The notes: a model not told the origin generated them from the letters alone. A stretch of 64,000 nt of DNA from Salpingoeca rosetta (GCA_033442325.1 JAWQFM010000002.1:2039044-2103043), one strand, 5' to 3'. Shown: positions 1 to 18,613, counted from the stretch's first letter. Numbers and translations are program-made.

Positions 1-150
1 ACGACAAGTGAGGTTCCCCACGTGGTCTGCGCTCTTGGCCGTCAACGCTTGTACACGAGCAATCTATGCTGCACCACTCATCATTACTCAAGCATGAACA
101 CGCGCACACACACACTCACACGCGCACACACTCTCTCACTCCCTTGTCAG

Positions 151-557
151 GTCGCGCCCTGATCCTGCACAGGCCAGCGTGAAGCGTGCAAAGCAGCTCG
201 AGGAGGTGCATGTTGATGTGCATGTGTGGCTGTGCGTGGCTGTGCGTGGCTGTGTGCGAGCGTTTGCGCGTTTGTATGGCGCTATGATGCCAGAGATCAA
301 AGAACGCGGCTTGCTACGCCCTGTCCTTGCTCACATCACCACCACCATTGTTGTCGCGGCAGGTTGGCTACCACGTGCACCCGATGCTCCGTGACACATC
401 GAGCGATGCAATTGCGAGAGATGACTTTATCAAGTCCATTCGCAACTTCCGGCCCTCGCTCACCGTGTTTGAGGTCAACAAGCACGCAAACGACTCCCTC
501 CTCACCATGATGACAAAGAAGAGGTTAGAGATAGGGCGTGGCAACAAGAGAGGTTCC

Positions 558-6512: not shown

Positions 6513-7670
6513 CTAGACCGTGATGTCCTCATCGTCGTAGTGGCGTGCCACGTACTTGCCGTTCCTCATGGCCACCAGCTCCGCCTGTGCGCGCCTGTGC
6601 GCTGCATCCGTTTCCCGCCGCCGCCTCTGGTCGTAGTCGTAAATTTCGTCATGCTCGCCGTCGTGGAAGCGCGCCACCATGCGCCCGTCCGTGTCCACAA
6701 GCACGCCGTCCTTTGTGGTGACATAGTCCTCGGCCTTTTGCATCGGGTCCTCCTCGTCCTCCATCTCGCCCAGGTCGTAGTAGCGCGGCTTGAGGCGGCG
6801 GCGGCGGCGCGGCAGCCCGTCGGTGCCGTTGCTGCTGTCATCGGTCGACGTCTCAGACTCCAGGTCGTCCTCGCTCAGCTTGAGCACGGGAATGACGGGC
6901 ACGGGCGTGTCGTACTCGGCGCCAACGCCGCTGTTGTCCAGCGTGGGCTTGCTCGACAGCGCGTGCTTGTTGCACGAGGCAAACAGCACCACAAACGCAA
7001 TGAGCGCCAGCACGCCAACCACGGCGATGATGATAATCTCGGTGAGGTTGAGCGGAGGGTCGCCGTCCGACGCCGGCGGTGGCGGTGGCGAAATGGGCAG
7101 GTTGTCGCGGATGGCCTGGACAAGCGGAGATCCGTACAGGAAGTCGTCCTGGTCAATGGACCACACCATGGCGCCACCGAGACCCTGCGAGAGCGCAAAC
7201 TCGGCCTTGAGCTTGATGGTGAAGGGCGAGTCGTGGGAGAACCACTGGTCGCCGTAATATGTGTACATGGTCTGCGTGAGGTTGTCGAAGCGGGTGATGA
7301 AGCCCGCCTGCTCAAACTCCAGCACCTCGTAGTAGGCAAGCAGCCCGGCCTCGTCCGTGTATGGGCCGGGGCGAGATGGGCTGGAGGCGGGTGCGCCAAT
7401 GGCGTGGTTGGCCGGCGAGTCGAGGGTCCAGCCACGCGCGTGGGTGCCAAAGCCAAGCAGCAGCTTCTGGCGCGGTGTGCCTTGCTCCAGCCAGAAGGCG
7501 ACGCTGTCCTGCACGTCAATGCCATCCGTGGATGACAGCGCGGTGTGGGCGCCAGTTTGGGGCTGAAGAGAAAACAAGAGGGTGAAAATAGGGGTCGTGA
7601 GCAGTGTGCATGTGTGTGTGTATGTGTGCATGTGATTGTGTGTGCGCGTGTGATTGTGTGTGTGCGCGCG

Positions 7671-7732
<62 letters not shown>

Positions 7733-8979
7733 GGGAGGGTAGAGGTGATCATGCGCGCGTTGTTGCAGTTGAAATGAGCACACCTGTGTGCATGTGTGTG
7801 CATTGTTGTGTTGTTGGCAGCAAGTCATGTTCAAGAGCTGTTGTTGGCGCTGTCGTTTCGTGCAATAGTAACGCAACACTAACCTCCCAGTAGCCGTGCA
7901 AGTCGTAGGAGAGGAGGTTGATAAAGTCAATGTACTTGTGCATCTCGCGAATGTGGTAGGCCTGCTCTGCAATGCCCCTGTACGCGGACACGGCCACGGT
8001 GACAATAAGCGCATCCTTCTGTGTGACCTCGCTGTTCACGGCCTGGCGCAGCTCCTGCAGGAACGTGAGGAAGTTGTCGCGGTCCTGTGGGCTGCCGCCG
8101 TTCTGCAGATAGCCCGGGAACTGGTGGTGGTTTGTTCGAGATAGGGGGGGGGAGGGTTGCGATGAATGGTGAGGAGGGAGGGAACAAAGAAGGGCGGAGG
8201 CGGAAACTAAACAGGAGACACGCAGCCACTGGAGCGCGAGCATGCGCCAGCTCACACATTTGAAATTGCCACCCAGTTCCCAAGTCACACATGCACACAC
8301 CTTGCACACACATGCAAGTAACTCACGACATGAAGGCACACATGAACAACACATTGTCAAAGTACAGCACACAACACACGTGCAGCACAGCACAGACGCA
8401 CACACACACACATACACACACACACTCACACTCACACACACACACATACACACACATATACACACACTCTCGCACTCACACTCACTCACACACACACTCA
8501 CACTCACACACACTCACTCACTCCTTACTCACTCCTTACACACCTCCCAGTCGATGTCGACGCCGTCAAAGTCGTGTGTGCGGAGGAACGGGATGAGGGA
8601 GGCGATGAAGGTGGCGCGGCGCTGCTGCGATGCGACCATGGTGGAAAAGCGGTACTGCGTGCGCGAGTCTGCGTTGAAGGTGTAGCCGCCAACGCTCAGG
8701 AGCGTCTTGATGTTGGGGTTGCGCTGACGCACGTGCGTGTGAAAGAGGGCGTACCGGCCGCCATCCACGTCCACGGCTTCGCCAGGCATGATGGTGTAGT
8801 CCGCATCGATGCCCGCAAACGCATAAGCGAGGTGGGTGTACTTGCCGGCGTCAATGTGCTCAATCATGAACGTGTATGGCGCAGGGCGGTGGTACGACCA
8901 CGAAGCGAAGTAGCCAAGCACCACCATGCAGCCAGACTGATCCTCGTCGTCACAGGGAAGGCCTGCATGGGTGCGTGTG

Positions 8980-9051
<72 letters not shown>

Positions 9052-10916
9052 GTGTGTGTGTGTGCGTACGATGTGTTGTGTGTGTGTGCGTACGATGTGT
9101 TGTGTGTGTGCGTGTGGGTGTGCGTGTGTGTGTGGGTGAGCTGACAGATGCGGCAAGTCAAGCAAAGAAAATTGTGCAGTGCGGTTGCTGCTGCTCTTGG
9201 TGTTCATGTGGGTGCATTAAACGTTTGAGGCGTACATATCGCCACACAGAATGGTATTTGATGTCAAGCAGACGCATGCACCTGTGAACTGTGAGCTGCG
9301 TACCTTGTGGGTTGTCTTGGGGAAGAAGGGCAATATCGGCACAGCCCCAAAACTCCTCGGGGAACACATCTCCACACGCGGGCTTGTTCTTGTCAATGCC
9401 GTACTCTGCTGGAAAGCCGAACGACACATACCCGTGAGGCAGACACTCGCCTGCACCCACAAAGTGCCACTGAACAACACACATTGCAACATATACAAAG
9501 TCTTGTGAGTAACGGCCACCTTCCAAGCACACAAACAAACACACAATCAAACACGCACAAGCAAGCATTTGCACACACCGCACAGAGCACGCACAGGCTC
9601 ATGCTCACCTGAAGCACGCAGTGGCTGCATGTGAGCTGTTCCGGCATGTGAAATGTCGGGTGGTACACGCCGAAACCTGGCTTGACGAAGAAGCGTTCGT
9701 CCCAGCTAAAGTCAATCAGGTTGCCGTCTTCCACGCGTCGCAACAGGTGTTCGTTGAAGCACTCCTGCGACACATTGGTTGCCCCTGTGTATATGTACGT
9801 GTGTGTGTATGTGCGTGCGTGTGTGTGTGTGTGTGTGTGCACGTGCGTGTGTGTGTGTGTGTGTGTGTTGTGTTGTGTATATGTACGTGTATGTGTACGT
9901 GCGTGTGTGTGTGTATGTGTGTGTGCATACATATGTGTACATGTATGTATATATGTGTGTACAGAGACAGACACACACAAGTCAAGAGAGAAACGGGCAA
10001 TCAAAAGCGTGAGTGTGGCTGTGATGATGATGCGAGCAAAGTGACAAAACACACAAACTGAAGCAGACGCGCACACGCGTCGGCCACACCATGGCACACC
10101 GATCGCACAGCCCCCCTCAGACGTACGATCGCAGATGCTGAAGACCACGTGTCCGGGTGGCGTGTCCTCGTCGGTGATGAAGGTCATGTTGAGGGTTTGC
10201 CCCGGCGTGAGGGTGGCAGACACCGTCTCTGGGGTGAGAAAGTCTGGCACACTGCCGGCAACACCGCCGCAGTAGCCGTAGCGGGCAGCGGTGTACGCAC
10301 TGTCGCGTGAGGGCCACACATCGTTTGGCGTGTTGTTCCGCACAACATCTCGTCCGCCCGCATCAAAGCGCCCGTTCCAGCTGAGAAGAAAGGAAAAAAA
10401 AAAAGAAAAAAACAGGGAAGGAGTTGGTGTGAGTTGTGGATGTCATTGGAGGGAGGACTGAGGTGGGACGGGGCGATGGCAAAGGGGGAGGAGAAGAGGG
10501 AGGACGAGGCAAGCAGAACACACACGCGTACACGCACACGCAAGCACGCACACAACACACGCGTACACGCACACGCAAGCACGCACACAACACACGCGTA
10601 CATGCACACGCAAGCACGCACACAACACACGCGTACATGCGCATGCAAGCGCGCACACAACACACGCGTGCACACGACCAGGGAACGAAACAGCAGGCAC
10701 CAAAACGCACTTGAAGTCGAAGTTTCCGGGATCGCTGCGGGTGGTGGGCCATGCAAGATATGGGCCGCCACCACGCGGTGGAAGCGCAGCCTGTGTTGGC
10801 TCAGGTGTACATCCAGCAAGGACTGTCAGCACCAACGCTGCTGCCGCTGCGGACCACCCCATAGAGGAACCTGATGACCAGTGTGGTTGGTGTCGTGACC
10901 AGCCCCTCTTCTGCAT
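6513..10916 (-). CDS. Membrane-anchored GH18 chitinase with N-terminal AA15/LPMO-like domain (exons 10916-10711, 10380-10127, 9784-9609, 9469-9304, 8962-8544, 8120-7884, 7562-6513)
   Basis: GH18 motifs: GYFASWS, YTHLAYAF, KTLLSVGG, intact FDGVDIDWE|FP (DxxDxDxE), SYDLHG, GLGGAMVWSIDQDD. N-terminal domain has GYCGG, GHVVFSIC, SQECFNEHLL, LTCSHCVLQW, EEFWGCADI. TM IIIIAVVGVLALIAFVVLFASC. All six introns are GT-AG with consistent phase. Confidence 0.9.
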
Positions 10917-11289: not shown

Positions 11290-11344
<55 letters not shown>

Positions 11345-12160
11345 ACACATATACACACACACAAGAGGAGCAATAGCGACACTCACCCGCTGTGTATTAT
11401 GATTGGATGTGTGAATGAATCAATGCAAGGCGAGCTCGCGCCCGACGTGTCTGTAAGGTGTGTGTTTGCAGGGAATTGAGAGGGGGAAATGAAGAGTGCA
11501 AGGCGTGAGTCGGTGAGCGAGTGAGCGAGCGTGTGAAGGAGGGAGAAGGTTTGGTTGGTGTGGTAAAGGCATGGCAGACTACGAAATGGAGAGACACAAG
11601 AAGCTTGCTTGCATGGGACAGTCACCAGCGTGGACCACTACGTAGCCCCCATTTGCTGTCCTCAGCAAGCAACCTTACAGACAGACTGACAGACAGAGAG
11701 CAACGAACAGGTGTACGAACAAACAGAGAGACAGGCCACCCACAACAAGAAGTCTGCGGGGCAAGCCCATCCAAGTTGGGGGAGGGGGGTCGCAACAATC
11801 AAGCCAATCAGGCAGTAGTACAACCAACGCGAACAACCAACGCATGCGAGGGGCGACTCTTCACTCTTACCTTGCCAGCAATTGGTGCTGCAGAAGCCAA
11901 GGAAGGGAAAAAAAAGACAGGGGGCAGAGGGAGAAGAGGGCAGGGGAGAAGAATATGGCAGCCCCCAGCAGAGCAAGCAACGGCCGATCAATTGCCAAGC
12001 AAGCGATGGGTATCGTGTTGCTTTGGCTGGATACGACGTGGGTTCTCGTGCAATGGCGCGTGGCCCAGGAATGTGTGTGTGTGTGTGGGGGGGGGGGACG
12101 TGGGACTTTGCTTGCTTGCAGGCAAACAAAGCGAGTCAGGGAATGAGAAGCAGTGAGATG

Positions 12161-14133: not shown

Positions 14134-14339
14134 NNNNNNNNNNNNNNNNNNNNNNNNNNNNNNNNNNNNNNNNNNNNNNNNNNNNNNNNNNNNNNNNNNN
14201 NNNNNNNNNNNNNNNNNNNNNNNNNNNNNNNNNNNNNNNNNNNNNNNNNNNNNNNNNNNNNNNNNNNNNNNNNNNNNNNNNNNNNNNNNNNNNNNNNNNN
14301 NNNNNNNNNNNNNNNNNNNNNNNNNNNNNNNNNNNNNNN
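14134..14339. other. Assembly gap (N run)
   Basis: Run of n characters followed by (CT)n. Confidence 0.99.
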
Positions 14340-14439: not shown

Positions 14440-17400
14440 ATGAGCAACCCTGGTGGCCGTGGCCGCAAATCAAGCTCGGCCGATTCGCGAGCAACCAGCA
14501 TGGATAAGCAATCCAGCCTGCACTCCATCACCAGCGCCCAGCTGGACACCGCCCTCTTTGGCCAGGAGGACGCCCGCTCCTCCGCCTCCCACCAACACCA
14601 GCACCAGCAGCACCAGCCCCAACGCGCAGGCAGGCCCATGTCCTTTGCCTCGCAGCCGCAGCAGCCTCTGAGGCACCGCGACTCGGCCGCTTCCTCCAGC
14701 GCCTACCAGCAGCGCCGCACCTCCCTCGACTGGACCCGCCTCAACGCCGAGGCCGCCCACGCCCCGCGCAGCATGCCGCCCACGGACGTGCCGGAGCCGC
14801 CAGAGAACCCCGACGTGTTCTCCCAGCGCACCAACTACGTGACGGAGGAGGACTTCCTGCGCCAGCGCGAGCAGGACCGCGCAGTCGCCTCCAGCGGCAA
14901 GAAGAACCCGGCAGACACGGGCTACATCAGCAGCCTCGTCACGGGCGTGCGCGTCGACAACATCAAGACCAGCCTCATCCGCAAGTCCCAGCGCGACAAG
15001 CCCAAGAAGGACGGCGCCATCCAGGAGGAGGACGAGGACGAGGACGAGTATGACGACGACGGCGAGGATGACTACGTGGACGGACACACCAACCCCCGCG
15101 CCTCGCGCCTACATAGCCACGCCACCGCCGCCTCCGCCTCTGCCGCCGCCGGTCGCAGGCACACGGCCGCTAGCCACAGCGCTGACCATGCCTCCGTCCG
15201 CAGCGGCGGTCACAAGTCCTCCTCCTCGTCGCAGGCGTCTTCTTACGCCATCCTCTCCGAGCGGGGCGATGACTCGCACGCCCAGGGTTATGCCTCCGTC
15301 GCCACCGGGGACCACGCCCTGGACACGAGCGGCAGCAACAACGCGGCGGTGCTCACCCTGGACCACCAGCAACACACTGGCGGTGACAGCGACGTCGACG
15401 CAGCGCGCTTCGACGGCAACGGCGCCGCCCACAGCGCGCTGGAGATGGCCATGCAGGATGTCTCTGCACAGCTCCTCGACAGCCAACAGCAGGACCAACA
15501 CCAACACCAGCAGCAGCAGCCACAGGCCGCGGTGTTCTACGACAACGTGACACAGTCTGCGCTGGAGCGCAGCGGCGCCAGCGCCGGCGATGACGGCGCC
15601 AACGACAACAACTCGCGGCGCGCCATCAACCAGACATACGCCAGCACCTCTCCTGCCAACAGCAGCGCCACACCCGGGTCCCGCGCCGCTGGCAAGCGCC
15701 ACCCCATGCTCATCAACGCCGCCGTCAACAACACCAACCGCCGTCCCTTTGCCAACAACAACAACAACACCTCCGCCATCATGGCAGCTGAGGACGACAA
15801 CAACACGCTGCAGGGTGGCTTCTCCCGCAACAACTCGTACCAGCGCGCGTCGTACCGCCCGCCGTCGTCCCAGCCCTCCTACCGCGGGCCGGGTGAGATG
15901 ACGCTCAAGCGCCGCCACTTTGGCGGCAAGGACCGCGGCTTTGTCACCAAGGTGCACAAGGCCGTGACGGACGGGCAGGTGGTGATCCCGGACCCGCACA
16001 CGCTGCGCAGCCCCGTCACCACGGTGTACGCGCGCCACGAGGATTTCTACGCCGACGGAAACAAGTCGTACTACGTGCCGGACAGCCGCAAGAAGCGGCG
16101 CATGTGCTGCGTCGTGCCGTGCTACAACGAGCCCAGCGACGCGCTCCGGCGCACGCTGACCTCGCTGCACGGCCAGCTGGACAACCTGCGCAAGCTCGAC
16201 TTTGACTTCCACGTCGTCGTCATCATGGATGGCTGGCAGCTCACGTCCGAGTCCATGCGCACGTACCTGCAGACCATCTTCGACATGCCGGAGAACGTGG
16301 AGAACGAGGGCCCCACGTGGTGGGACGACCTCAACACGCTCGAGGGCAACCCCTCTGTGGAGACGTTTATCATCCAGAACGTCAACATTGAGACGTGGAC
16401 GGTGGAGCCCGTGTTCATCGAGCCCGAGGAGTTGCCTGGCGCGCGCATGCACATCACGCTCATTGTTAAGCGCGACAACCGCAGGAAGCACAACACGCTC
16501 GAGTGGTTCTTCCGCTCCTTTGCTGTCGAGTACGGTGCAGAGTACAGCTTCACCACGGATTGCGGCACCCTCTTCCAGAACGACACCATCTACCACCTGG
16601 CGCGCCACCTGGACCTATTCCCGCGCTGCGGTGGCGTGACAGGCCGGCAGCGTGTCATGTCTGCCAAGCAGCAGGGCGTGGACCACGAGAGCTGGTACTC
16701 CGCGTGGATGCGCAGCGTGCAAGGTTTCGAGTACGAGGCGACGTATGCCTCCTATGTCGGTGCCTTCTCCATGGCGGGCATGCTTCCCGTGATTCCGGGC
16801 CCCTGCGGGCTCTTCAACATGAAGCACCTCAACGGGCAGGGTGTGGAGTTCTTCTTCGACAAGGTCAAGCAGGACCCCGACACGGCCGGCCTGTTGCTGG
16901 GTAACGGCCTCCTGGCTGAGGATCGCTTCCTTTCCTACGCCGCCGTCGTGTCCACGGGCAAGCCCACCATCACTGAGTTTGTGCCGGAGAGCGTGTTCTT
17001 CTTCGAGGCAGAGACCGAGCTGCGCACGTTTGTCTTCCAGCGTCGTCGCTGGAACAACGGCACCTTTGCTTGCTTCGTCTGGCTCATGCTCAATCTCGAC
17101 ATCATCCGCAAGTCCCCCCACGGCATTGTCTTCAAGCTGCTCATGCAGTTCCTCGTGAGTTCACTTTCTCAGCCTGTGTTATATGCCGTGCTGCACTGTG
17201 CTGCACTGTGCTGCACTGCACTGCACTGTGCTGCACTGCACTGTGTTGTGTTGTGTTGTGTTGTGTTGTGTTGTGTTGTGTTGTGTTGTGTTGCGTTGTG
17301 TTGTGTTGTGTTGTGTTATGTTGTGTTGTAGCGTGCTGTGCACGTGTATCGGTGTTCTTTCTGTGCACACGCGTGTTGATGTGCTTTCTGTGTACAATTG

Positions 17401-17687: not shown

Positions 17688-18613
17688 GTGTGCGTGGGTG
17701 TGTGTGTGCGTGTGTGTTATCAGGTTTGAGGTGCGGAGTCCCGAGCACATGTCCCACTGCCGAACTCTCTTTCCGTTTTGTTTTCCCTGTTTAACTCACA
17801 GTCCGCTCCACTCCACTCCACCCCACTCCACTCTCTTCCATCCTGCACAAACAGGGGTCCAGTTTCTGGGCAGACATGATTTGTCTCGTGTACATGGTGC
17901 TCTATGTGACGTTCATTTCGCAGCACGTCCGGTCCAAGTTTGAGGCGTGGCTGTTCCACGTGTTTACGCTCATACACGGCATCGCAGTGCTGTTCATCAT
18001 CTCGACGTTCATCCACGCAGCTGCGACGCGACGTGACCACGTTGTCGACCTCACCCTCTACCTCTTCGCCGTGTACCAGGGCGCGCCCATCCTGCTGTCC
18101 CTGATTGTGAGCCCGCGCTCGTGCGGGTTCCTTGTCAAGTACTTTGTGCCCTACATGATCTTCCTGCCGACGCACACCATGACCTTCTGGACGTATGCGC
18201 TCACGCGCACGTTTGATCTCACGTGGGGTAACCGCCCCACAACCCACAAAGTCCCCAAGAACGAGCGCAACCTCATTGTGGAGAAGCTCAAGAGCAGCGC
18301 CGTGTCGCTGATTGGCTTTGTGGCCTGCATCAACCTCCTCATCGCCGTGGTGCTGCTTCAAATTGCCGTGTCCGGGCGAACGCTGTGGATCATCTGGACC
18401 CTCGTGTCCCTCATGATCTTCTCCGGCGTGCAGATGGCGCTGTCGTTCTGCTTTGCGCTGGAGTACCATCTCATCCGCCGCGTCCGCCGCTGGATCCGCA
18501 TTGGCCGCCTCAACCTCGCCCGCCACAGGCGCAAGAACAAGCGCAAGCTCCCCGATTCAGGCCAGAGCCAGGCACAACTCCTCGAGTGGGACAACACTGG
18601 TGTACCAAAGTAA
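14440..18613 (+). CDS. CHS: Chitin synthase (GT2; exons 14440-17154, 17503-17610, 17855-18613)
   Basis: Motifs VVPCYNE, IMDG, KRDNRRKHN, TDCGT, QGFEY, VIPGPCGLF, LAEDRFL, QRRRW, and C-terminal DLTWGNRP among multiple TM helices. Phase-0 GT-AG introns. Confidence 0.93.

What the first reader, a model, noticed from the sequence alone, without database searches (positions are those of the whole stretch)
9304..10790. AA15-like LPMO domain apparently lacking the copper histidine brace, fused to an active GH18
Seen: exons 1-4 encode the AA15-type scaffold (YLAWPTTR, AGG, GYCG, GQTLNM, FSIC, SQECFNEHLL, LTCSHCVLQW, EEFWGCADI). However, the position of the obligatory N-terminal His reads ...ALPPRGGGPYL, and the second His site (typically TANHxG) reads DEDTPPG. 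Known: LPMO catalysis needs His1 and a second His; AA15-GH18 fusions are described in some other eukaryotes. Inference: a pseudo-LPMO repurposed as a chitin-binding or fibril-guiding module on a membrane-tethered chitinase.
Basis: partly seen in the sequence, partly recalled or inferred. Interest (0 to 1): 0.75.

Follow-up and report, generated by a model that had tools for sequence, protein, structure and literature searches.

The report
Copper-site-less LPMO domain on choanoflagellate chitinase
This Salpingoeca rosetta gene encodes a membrane-anchored chitinase whose N-terminal domain keeps the fold of a copper-dependent chitin oxidase (AA15 LPMO) but has lost both copper-binding histidines. 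The same loss is conserved in related protists, so the domain is probably a retained non-oxidative chitin-handling module.

Summary
The minus-strand gene at 10862..6516 has 7 exons with GT-AG introns. It is the annotated S. rosetta protein XP_004997388.1 (817 aa).

Exons 1-4 (10862..9304) encode an AA15-type LPMO domain:
- Pfam LPMO_10 scores 29.3 bits against a cut-off of 23.
- The AlphaFold model has pLDDT 87.9.
- It matches the Thermobia AA15 structure 5MSZ at Z 19.0, rmsd 2.8 Å, over 176 of 195 residues.

Both copper ligands are gone. The structural His1 position is Gly33, behind an N-terminal extension of about 14 residues or more. The His91 equivalent is Pro125. In an 82-sequence family alignment these columns are His in 72/77 and 77/82 sequences.

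The exceptions form one clade (bootstrap 86). It holds three choanoflagellates (S. rosetta, Barroeca, Hartaetosiga) and environmental relatives. Wherever enough sequence exists, these have the same layout: LPMO-like domain, then GH18 with an intact DxDxE motif. The transmembrane helix is also seen in S. rosetta, Hartaetosiga and L104.

All 8 scaffold cysteines are kept. The domain is about as conserved as the GH18 domain (45% vs 48% identity), so it is functional and not decaying.

Best reading: a dead LPMO kept as a chitin-binding or targeting module. The function is inferred, not tested. A divergent chitin synthase gene lies next door. This is a new variant of a known kind; interest is moderate.

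The parts
10711..10862 (-). Exon 1 (annotated ATG 10862; an in-frame ATG also at 10916). It encodes the signal peptide, the Pro/Gly-rich extension A-L-P-P-R-G-G, then G33-P-Y-L-A-W-P-T-T-R. Gly33 (codon 10766..10764) sits at the His1 position.
   Evidence: exact map of P0001 aa 1-50
10127..10380 (-). Exon 2: W-N-G-R-F-D-A-G-G, Y-G-Y-C-G-G, and the T-D-E-D-T-P-P-G-H-V-V-F-S-I-C strand. Pro125 (codon 10160..10158) sits at the second-His (His91) position.
9609..9784 (-). Exon 3: S-Q-E-C-F-N-E-H-L-L ... L-T-C-S-H-C-V-L-Q. This is the most AA15-like stretch.
   Evidence: LPMO_10 E=0.049 alone; 5MSZ E=0.0026
9304..9469 (-). Exon 4: W-H-F-V-G-A-G-E-C ... P-E-E-F234-W-G-C-A-D-I. Phe234 sits at the axial Tyr184 position. 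This is the end of the LPMO-like domain.
8544..8962 (-). Exon 5: linker and the first part of GH18, ending in the catalytic motif D-G-V-D-I-D-W-E389.
7884..8120 (-). Exon 6: middle of GH18.
6516..7562 (-). Exon 7: end of GH18, Pro-rich stalk, TM helix (aa 644-665), and an acidic/basic cytosolic tail of about 150 aa. Stop codon at 6515..6513.
14440..17331 (+). Context, not part of the gene: the large exon of a divergently oriented chitin synthase gene.
   Evidence: Chitin_synth_1 36 bits, Chitin_synth_2 32.6 bits

Best explanation
The gene encodes a type I membrane protein with this layout: signal peptide, AA15-derived LPMO-fold domain, active GH18 chitinase, TM helix, cytosolic tail. The LPMO-fold domain is catalytically dead as a copper mono-oxygenase. 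The residue at the His1 position is Gly33 and is not N-terminal, because an extension of about 14 residues or more precedes it. The second ligand is Pro125. Several second-shell residues that are near-invariant in the family are also replaced: N to S at 43, D to G at 90, H to T at 124, T to G at 199, and N to G at 236. The scaffold is under purifying selection. I infer that it has been kept as a non-oxidative chitin-binding or substrate-positioning module. It would hold the membrane-tethered GH18 on crystalline or nascent chitin at the cell surface, probably on chitin made by the neighbouring chitin synthase. Shown here: fold, loss of both His, conservation, architecture, and a clade of orthologues. 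Inferred: chitin binding, absence of any metal, and the biological role.
For: - Fold: the AF2 model has pLDDT 87.9 and pTM 0.86. The top Foldseek hit is 5MSZ at E=3.4e-9. VIA-align gives Z 19.0, rmsd 2.8 Å, 176/195 residues, model 15..227 against chain 1..195; AA13 and AA10 structures follow at Z 11-13.
- Family: LPMO_10 scores 29.3 bits against a cut-off of 23.
- His loss: column counts are His 72/77 and 77/82. The only exceptions are P0001, P0002, P0004, P0006 and P0009.
- N-termini: all 74 viral or metagenomic relatives whose N-terminus was recovered start with H-[G/A/S] after the signal peptide.
- Clade: the His-less sequences form one group (UFBoot 86 / SH-aLRT 86). The three choanoflagellates group at 100/94. 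The clade is nested among canonical AA15s including Choanoeca flexa P0013.
- Same architecture elsewhere: Hartaetosiga P0004 has LPMO_10 + GH18 + TM. Genomic contigs L104 and L105 have a His-less N-terminus, no second His, and GH18 with a D-x-D-x-E motif; L104 also has a TM segment.
- Constraint: S. rosetta versus H. balthica identity is 44.9% in the LPMO-like domain, 48.2% in GH18 and 34.6% in the tail. All 8 Cys fall in near-invariant Cys columns.
- Clade-specific conserved residues: Trp52, Pro29 and Gly31 are conserved in the His-less group and absent from canonical members.
- No paralogue: no other AA15-like sequence is found in the genome.
- Neighbour: a chitin synthase gene lies alongside.
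Against: - No binding, metal or activity data exist.
- I could not inspect model coordinates. The geometry of the former copper site and the position of the N-terminal extension (pLDDT about 55) and of the Trp52 loop (pLDDT below 50) are unknown.
- From memory, not checked here: in the bacterial chitin-binding LPMO CBP21, mutating the second His weakens chitin binding. Loss of the brace might therefore reduce affinity.
- Choanoflagellates have no demonstrated chitin structure (PMC6789865).
- Read-level expression evidence could not be obtained.
Confidence: 0.55

Rival explanations
1. The domain is conserved but does not bind chitin. It would serve as a structural spacer, an intramolecular regulator of the GH18, or a protein-protein interaction module, for example with the chitin synthase or matrix proteins.
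For: The conservation and architecture are equally compatible with this. The residues that define LPMO surface chemistry are changed.
Against: LPMO-fold domains are polysaccharide-surface binders wherever they have been characterised. Fusion to a chitinase and a chitin synthase neighbour point to chitin. A clade-specific conserved Trp52 has been gained in a loop next to the former active face (its location is inferred from the alignment only).
Confidence: 0.2
2. The domain is a decaying relic of a once-active AA15-GH18 fusion, carried along without a function of its own.
For: Both ligands and several second-shell residues are lost. Pfam covers only residues 105-240 in S. rosetta.
Against: It is as conserved as the catalytic GH18 between S. 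rosetta and H. balthica (44.9% vs 48.2%). All 8 cysteines and the fold are retained. It is kept in at least 5 lineages with open frames. New clade-specific conserved residues have appeared.
Confidence: 0.1
3. The domain is still a metalloprotein or redox enzyme with a non-canonical site. Candidate ligands are His128 (G-H), His196 (Q-W-H-F, conserved in all four His-less sequences that cover that region) and the acidic T-D-E-D loop.
For: His196 is His in S. rosetta, H. balthica, L104 and L105, while most canonical members have Tyr or Trp there. His128 is retained.
Against: His128 is equally common in canonical members (62/82), so it is not a replacement ligand. The acidic loop is not conserved across the clade: D-E-D-T-P, D-N-D-Q-P, D-A-S-Q-P, V-D-A-L, P-D-S-T. 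No free N-terminal amine is available at the site. The geometry was not examined.
Confidence: 0.07
4. The missing brace is a gene-model artefact. On this view the real transcript uses another first exon or a processing site that exposes an N-terminal His, making it a normal AA15.
For: Read-level splice evidence could not be obtained. An upstream in-frame ATG (10916) adds a His-containing segment before the signal peptide.
Against: The second His is missing regardless of the N-terminus. The Gly33 codon is internal to exon 1. The only upstream AG before it would still give A-A-L-P-P-R-G-G-G-P-Y. The H. balthica Trinity ORF ('type:complete') and the L104 and L105 genomic exons show the same contiguous signal peptide plus G-P-Y.
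Confidence: 0.03

Closest known systems
AA15 LPMOs (TdAA15A, PDB 5MSZ; Sabbadin et al. 2018, PMC5823890), including the described AA15-GH18 fusions of Chlorophyta, diatoms and tunicates
   Same: The fold matches (Z 19.0). It shares sequence motifs (C-x-x-C-V-L-Q-W, E-E-F-W-x-C-A-D-I), the disulfide cysteines, a position N-terminal to GH18, and a eukaryotic distribution. Canonical AA15-GH18 fusions were also recovered here (L035, L040).
   Different: Both copper ligands are missing (His1 to Gly33 behind an extension; His91 to Pro125). The family-typical C-P-H-C loop is replaced by W-N-G-R. Near-invariant N, D, T and N second-shell residues are replaced. It therefore fails the defining catalytic features.
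LsAA9B and related 'Arg-AA9' LPMO-like proteins lacking the histidine brace (Frandsen et al. 2019, J Biol Chem 294:17117; cited through PMC10354095; the paper itself was not readable here)
   Same: These are natural LPMO-fold proteins that have lost the His brace yet are conserved. Their function is unknown.
   Different: They belong to a different LPMO family (fungal AA9, not AA15). They are free-standing secreted proteins, not a module fused to a membrane-anchored glycoside hydrolase.
X325 / Bim1-type LPMO-like copper proteins (PDB 6IBH)
   Same: They have an LPMO fold used for a non-oxidative role at the cell surface, and they are membrane-tethered. Structural match Z 9.7.
   Different: X325 keeps a His brace and binds copper. 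The present domain cannot form a brace.
Canonical choanoflagellate AA15 (Choanoeca flexa P0013; environmental L022)
   Same: It is the closest canonical relative by identity (40.8% identity) and groups in the same part of the tree.
   Different: P0013 has H-G-M-M-T-K-P-A-A-R directly after its signal peptide and I-T-A-H-H-Q-G-H. It has 12 Cys and a Ser/Thr-rich stalk with a TM helix, but no GH18.

Membership tests
CAZy AA15 / Pfam LPMO_10 (PF03067) lytic polysaccharide mono-oxygenases | Sequence match to the family model above its curated threshold | tested here: met
   P0001 scores 29.3 bits against a cut-off of 23, covering residues 105-240 only. The orthologue P0004 scores 38.1 bits over residues 37-244. 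PDB 5MSZ is hit at E=1.2e-5. A dbCAN AA15 HMM was not available.
CAZy AA15 / Pfam LPMO_10 (PF03067) lytic polysaccharide mono-oxygenases | LPMO immunoglobulin-like beta-sandwich fold, closest to AA15 | tested here: met
   The model has pLDDT 87.9. 5MSZ matches at Z 19.0, rmsd 2.8 Å, 176/195 residues. The next hits are AA13 at Z 13.3 and AA10s at about Z 11.
CAZy AA15 / Pfam LPMO_10 (PF03067) lytic polysaccharide mono-oxygenases | His as the first residue of the mature protein (His1: amino group plus imidazole ligate Cu) | tested here: not met
   Gly33 occupies the position, preceded by about 14 or more residues. That column is His in 72/77 relatives. Residues 1-50 contain no His. Signal-peptide cleavage was not predicted with a dedicated tool.
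CAZy AA15 / Pfam LPMO_10 (PF03067) lytic polysaccharide mono-oxygenases | Second copper-ligating His (His91 of TdAA15A, motif A-x-H-x-G) | tested here: not met
   Pro125 occupies the position. That column is His in 77/82 relatives.
CAZy AA15 / Pfam LPMO_10 (PF03067) lytic polysaccharide mono-oxygenases | Axial aromatic residue (Tyr184 in TdAA15A, Phe in most relatives) | tested here: met
   Phe234 in E-E-F-W-G-C. Phe occupies this column in 74/78 relatives.
CAZy AA15 / Pfam LPMO_10 (PF03067) lytic polysaccharide mono-oxygenases | Copper binding and oxidative cleavage of chitin or cellulose | not testable with these tools
   This needs recombinant protein. From the ligand loss I predict both are absent.
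GH18 chitinases (Pfam PF00704) | Family model match and catalytic D-x-x-D-x-D-x-E motif | tested here: met
   PF00704 scores 280 bits over residues 264-607. The motif D-G-V-D-I-D-W-E is at 382-389, and the S-x-G-G and Y-D motifs are present.
Non-catalytic carbohydrate-binding module (functional class, not a sequence family) | Binds polysaccharide without catalysis | not testable with these tools
   Inferred from the fold, the loss of the brace, the conservation and the fusion to GH18.

The most novel reading that the evidence does not exclude
A conserved clade in choanoflagellates and related protists has turned an oxidative AA15 LPMO into a copper-free module with a new job. In this reading the module handles nascent chitin fibrils at the plasma membrane, together with the divergently encoded chitin synthase and its own GH18. 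If so, the sister group of animals would build a so far unrecognised chitin-containing structure (theca, stalk or matrix) with dedicated remodelling machinery.
Probability: 0.2. Interest if true: 0.75.

Novelty: new variant of a known kind. Interest (0 to 1): 0.55.

Why it matters
LPMOs are defined by the copper histidine brace. Natural brace-less members are known for fungal AA9 but, as far as my literature searches reached, not for AA15.

This case offers several things:
- It is a clean natural experiment. The fold, the disulfide cysteines and the fusion partner are kept in at least five lineages (three choanoflagellates and two environmental contigs) while the whole catalytic centre is replaced. 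That separates the binding and scaffolding role of an LPMO domain from its redox chemistry.
- It sits in S. rosetta, a genetically tractable choanoflagellate, next to a chitin synthase gene. Choanoflagellates have chitin synthases but no known chitin structure (PMC6789865). The locus therefore gives a concrete handle on that open question.
- It warns against automatic annotation. Pfam or dbCAN would call this an LPMO (AA15), and NCBI calls it 'oviductal secretory glycoprotein'.

Tried and rejected
- Exon-wise Pfam gave only a sub-threshold LPMO_10 hit on exon 3. PF03067 against the genome in six frames found nothing.
- Word-index protein searches were almost blank. Exon 2 within the 349-aa open frame found nothing. 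P0001 region 25-250 found only itself. P0001:25-250 alone found nothing. These blanks reflect the method, because the exhaustive search did find relatives.
- Hits P0003, P0005, P0007, P0011 and P0012 are multi-stretch matches. For P0003 and P0007 Pfam showed unrelated families (e.g. InlB B-repeats). P0005, P0011 and P0012 were not examined further. All five were set aside.
- The first AF2 model, from a 10-row alignment, was poor (pLDDT 57.8). Even so its only strong Foldseek hit was 5MSZ. It was replaced by the 82-row model.
- The search for related loci with the fragment-rich alignment A2 failed. A3 worked.
One earlier call (8) had spanned it. One search returned loci L101-L103 that include it, and I did not use them.
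- I did not type or submit a joined spliced model. The identical annotated protein P0001 was retrieved by searching exon 2 alone, used by id, and checked against the window exon by exon.
- The run table lists about ten runs holding 0.35-0.47 of the sampled words, close to the exon fraction of the stretch. This suggests spliced mRNA contigs, but it is only suggestive.
- PMC6851306 (the LsAA9B paper) is not held.
- Model coordinates are not exposed, so distances in the former copper site could not be measured.

Full report
**What is there**

The region lies in a eukaryotic genome (55.4 Mb, 68 contigs) with GT-repeat-rich introns. On the minus strand I derived a seven-exon model with GT-AG introns.

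An exhaustive HMMER search with exon 2 alone returned a 100% identical 817-aa protein, P0001. The source databases name it XP_004997388.1 / EGD80827.1 / F2U099, 'oviductal secretory glycoprotein', of Salpingoeca rosetta.

P0001 maps exactly onto the window as follows:
- aa 1-50: 10862..10713
- aa 52-136: 10379..10125
- aa 137-194: 9782..9609
- aa 195-250: 9469..9302
- aa 251-389: 8960..8544
- aa 390-468: 8120..7884
- aa 469-817: 7562..6516

I did not type or submit a joined spliced sequence. All whole-protein work used the database entry by id.

**Check of the observation**

- Exon 3 alone matches the only solved AA15, Thermobia domestica TdAA15A (5MSZ), at E=0.0026.
- The domain matches 5MSZ at E=1.2e-5.
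- The full protein passes Pfam LPMO_10 (29.3 bits against a cut-off of 23) and GH18 (280 bits).
- The GH18 carries D-G-V-D-I-D-W-E (382-389). A hydrophobic helix (644-665) precedes a tail of about 150 residues.

The protein is therefore a type I membrane protein with both domains outside the cell.

**Relatives**

The exon-2 search gave thirteen hits. The relevant ones are:
- a full-length orthologue from Hartaetosiga balthica (P0004, 822 aa, transcript ORF marked complete);
- a fragmentary model from Barroeca monosierra (P0002);
- environmental fragments (P0006, P0008, P0009, P0010);
- a canonical AA15 from Choanoeca flexa (P0013).

Pattern scans of viral and metagenome collections added 98 loci. 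These include chlorovirus-sized viral genomes and many marine metatranscriptome contigs. In all 74 of these whose N-terminus could be recovered, the domain starts H-[G/A/S]-x-x-x-x-P-x-x-R directly after a signal peptide.

**The two histidines**

In the 82-row alignment A4, the His1 column is His in 72 of 77 rows. The second-His column is His in 77 of 82 rows.

The exceptions are the same five rows in both columns: S. rosetta (G, P), B. monosierra (G, P), H. balthica (G, Q), P0006 (L, L) and P0009 (S, T). For P0009 the His1-column letter comes from a fragment that starts in intron-derived sequence. The true first exon on its contig L105 reads T-G-P-Y-M-L-Q-P-A-I-R after a signal peptide. L104, the contig of P0010, reads P-P-A-G-P-Y-V-R-S-P-T-T-R.

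Pairwise alignments to 5MSZ fix the equivalences:
- TdAA15A A89-P-H91-I-G-F corresponds to T-P-P125-G-H128.
- Tyr184 corresponds to Phe234. Phe is also the majority residue of the family (74/78), so that change is not specific to this clade.

**Fold**

A shallow alignment gave a poor model (pLDDT 57.8). The 82-row alignment gave pLDDT 87.9 and pTM 0.86.

Foldseek ranks 5MSZ first (E=3.4e-9), followed by AA13, AA10, AA9 and AA11 LPMOs. VIA-align gives Z 19.0, rmsd 2.8 Å, 176 of 195 residues for 5MSZ. The alignment begins at model residue 15 (= Gly33) opposite chain residue 1 (His1).

The structure-based and sequence-based assignments of the His1 position agree. The 14 modelled residues before Gly33 form an extension of low confidence.

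**Could a hidden exon supply His1?**

- The Gly33 codon lies inside exon 1.
- The only AG upstream of it in that exon would give A-A-L-P-P-R-G-G-G-P-Y.
- Residues 1-50 contain no His.
- The in-frame upstream ATG at 10916 adds 18 residues before the signal peptide only.
- The H. balthica transcript and the L104 and L105 genomic exons show the same contiguous arrangement.
- The second His is missing independently of all this.

**Is the domain decaying?**

No.
- S. rosetta and H. balthica share 44.9% identity in the LPMO-like domain, 48.2% in GH18 and 34.6% in the tail.
- All eight cysteines fall in near-invariant Cys columns.
- Positions near-invariant in canonical members are replaced throughout the clade: N43S, D90G/T/A, H124T/S/Q/A, H125P/Q/L/T, T199G/A, N236G.
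- New clade-specific residues are conserved: Pro29, Gly31, and Trp52 in W-N-G-R, which replaces the canonical C-P-H-C loop.

This pattern fits relaxed constraint on the catalytic centre with continued, partly new, constraint on the rest.

**Phylogeny**

With the His columns and the extension removed and six long-branch rows left out, a careful IQ-TREE run was made.
- It groups the five His-less rows (UFBoot 86 / SH-aLRT 86).
- The three choanoflagellates group at 100/94.
- The clade sits next to canonical sequences L024 and L035 (weak support, 81/29) and then C. flexa with L022.

The quick trees agree.

L035 is a canonical-type AA15-GH18 fusion (second His present; its N-terminus is cut off by the contig end). 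Its GH18 is the closest non-orthologous match to the S. rosetta GH18 (39%). The most economical history is one loss of the brace in an ancestral AA15-GH18 fusion. The tree is unrooted and three of the five rows are fragments, so this is an inference.

**Architecture elsewhere**

tblastn of P0001 and P0004 on L104 and L105 shows, exon by exon:
- the W-N-x-R-L-N-[A/G]-G-G motif;
- a second-His region without His (R-G-D-V-G-G-H-F-E-F-R-I-C; P-D-S-T-P-G-H-F-E-F-R-I-C);
- the Q-W-H-F strand;
- a GH18 with D-G-F-D-L-D-W-E or A-G-I-D-I-D-W-E;
- in L104, a TM segment.

The module combination is therefore conserved in at least five lineages.

**Genome context**

No other AA15-like sequence is detectable in the S. 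rosetta genome with single exons or with the family profile. The organism appears to have no canonical AA15.

A chitin synthase gene lies divergently upstream. Its large exon is at 14440-17331 on the plus strand, with Chitin_synth_1 and Chitin_synth_2 hits. An earlier scan note (s1-436019) pointed to this.

**Mechanism**

Shown:
- an LPMO fold;
- no possible histidine brace;
- an intact GH18;
- a membrane anchor;
- purifying selection on the domain.

Inferred: the domain works without copper as a chitin-surface binding or positioning module for the tethered chitinase. LPMO folds bind crystalline polysaccharide through the flat face that normally carries the copper. The clade has gained a conserved tryptophan in a loop adjoining that face. 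The gene partners point to chitin.

Alternatives are listed with odds under rival explanations: a non-chitin structural or regulatory role, a relic, a non-canonical metal site using His128/His196, and a gene-model artefact.

**Comparison with the known**

AA15-GH18 fusions are described (PMC5823890). Brace-less LPMO-like proteins are described for fungal AA9 (LsAA9B; cited in PMC10354095). X325 proteins are non-oxidative LPMO-like proteins that keep the brace.

I found no paper on LPMO-like proteins of choanoflagellates or on brace-less AA15. The library does not cover subscription journals. Choanoflagellates are said to lack known chitin structures although they have chitin synthases (PMC6789865).

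**Limits**

I sent nothing spanning those places to search tools afterwards.
- The run table only hints at spliced mRNA.
- Signal-peptide cleavage was not predicted with a dedicated tool.
- The function is untested.

**Verdict**

The finding is a new variant of a known kind. Interest is moderate (0.55).

Noticed in passing
window 14440-17331 (+) and 17876-18613 (+): A chitin synthase gene (Pfam Chitin_synth_1 and Chitin_synth_2) is oriented divergently from the chitinase gene. Its large exon begins about 3.5 kb from the chitinase ATG. The two genes may be co-regulated.
   Followed up: partly
window about 14150-14330: A run of N (an assembly gap) lies just upstream of the chitin synthase large exon. 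It is flanked by (CT)n/(GA)n-type simple repeats that translate as S-L repeats.
   Followed up: no
window 10862-10916 (-): An in-frame ATG 54 nt upstream of the annotated start would add 18 residues (M-Q-K-R-G-W-S-R-H-Q-P-H-W-S-S-G-S-S) before the signal peptide. Which start is used is unknown.
   Followed up: no
window 8975-9110, 9790-9950, 10520-10665, 11290-11350: The introns and the 5' flank are dominated by (GT)n/(CA)n microsatellites. Intron 1 holds a tandem repeat of about 33 nt in roughly 4 copies. These repeats create long spurious open frames on both strands.
   Followed up: no
L003-L020 (viral contigs, several of 288-369 kb): Large algal-virus-sized genomes encode canonical AA15-like LPMO domains with a signal peptide and H-G-[Y/F]-L. 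They lack the C-P-H-C loop (they read E-Y-D-H-M-S-L-A-G-G-G instead).
   Followed up: partly
L021, L023, L039 (metatranscriptome contigs): Canonical AA15 domains are fused to GH5 cellulase, with or without CBM1 or CBM2. L023 carries a GH18-like segment as well. The modular diversity is wider than the GH18 and GH19 fusions cited in PMC5823890.
   Followed up: partly
L104 6130-6863: In the environmental contig that carries a His-less orthologue, the next gene downstream encodes a DEAD-box helicase. No chitin synthase is visible within the 6.9 kb, so synteny with the S. rosetta locus could not be assessed.
   Followed up: no
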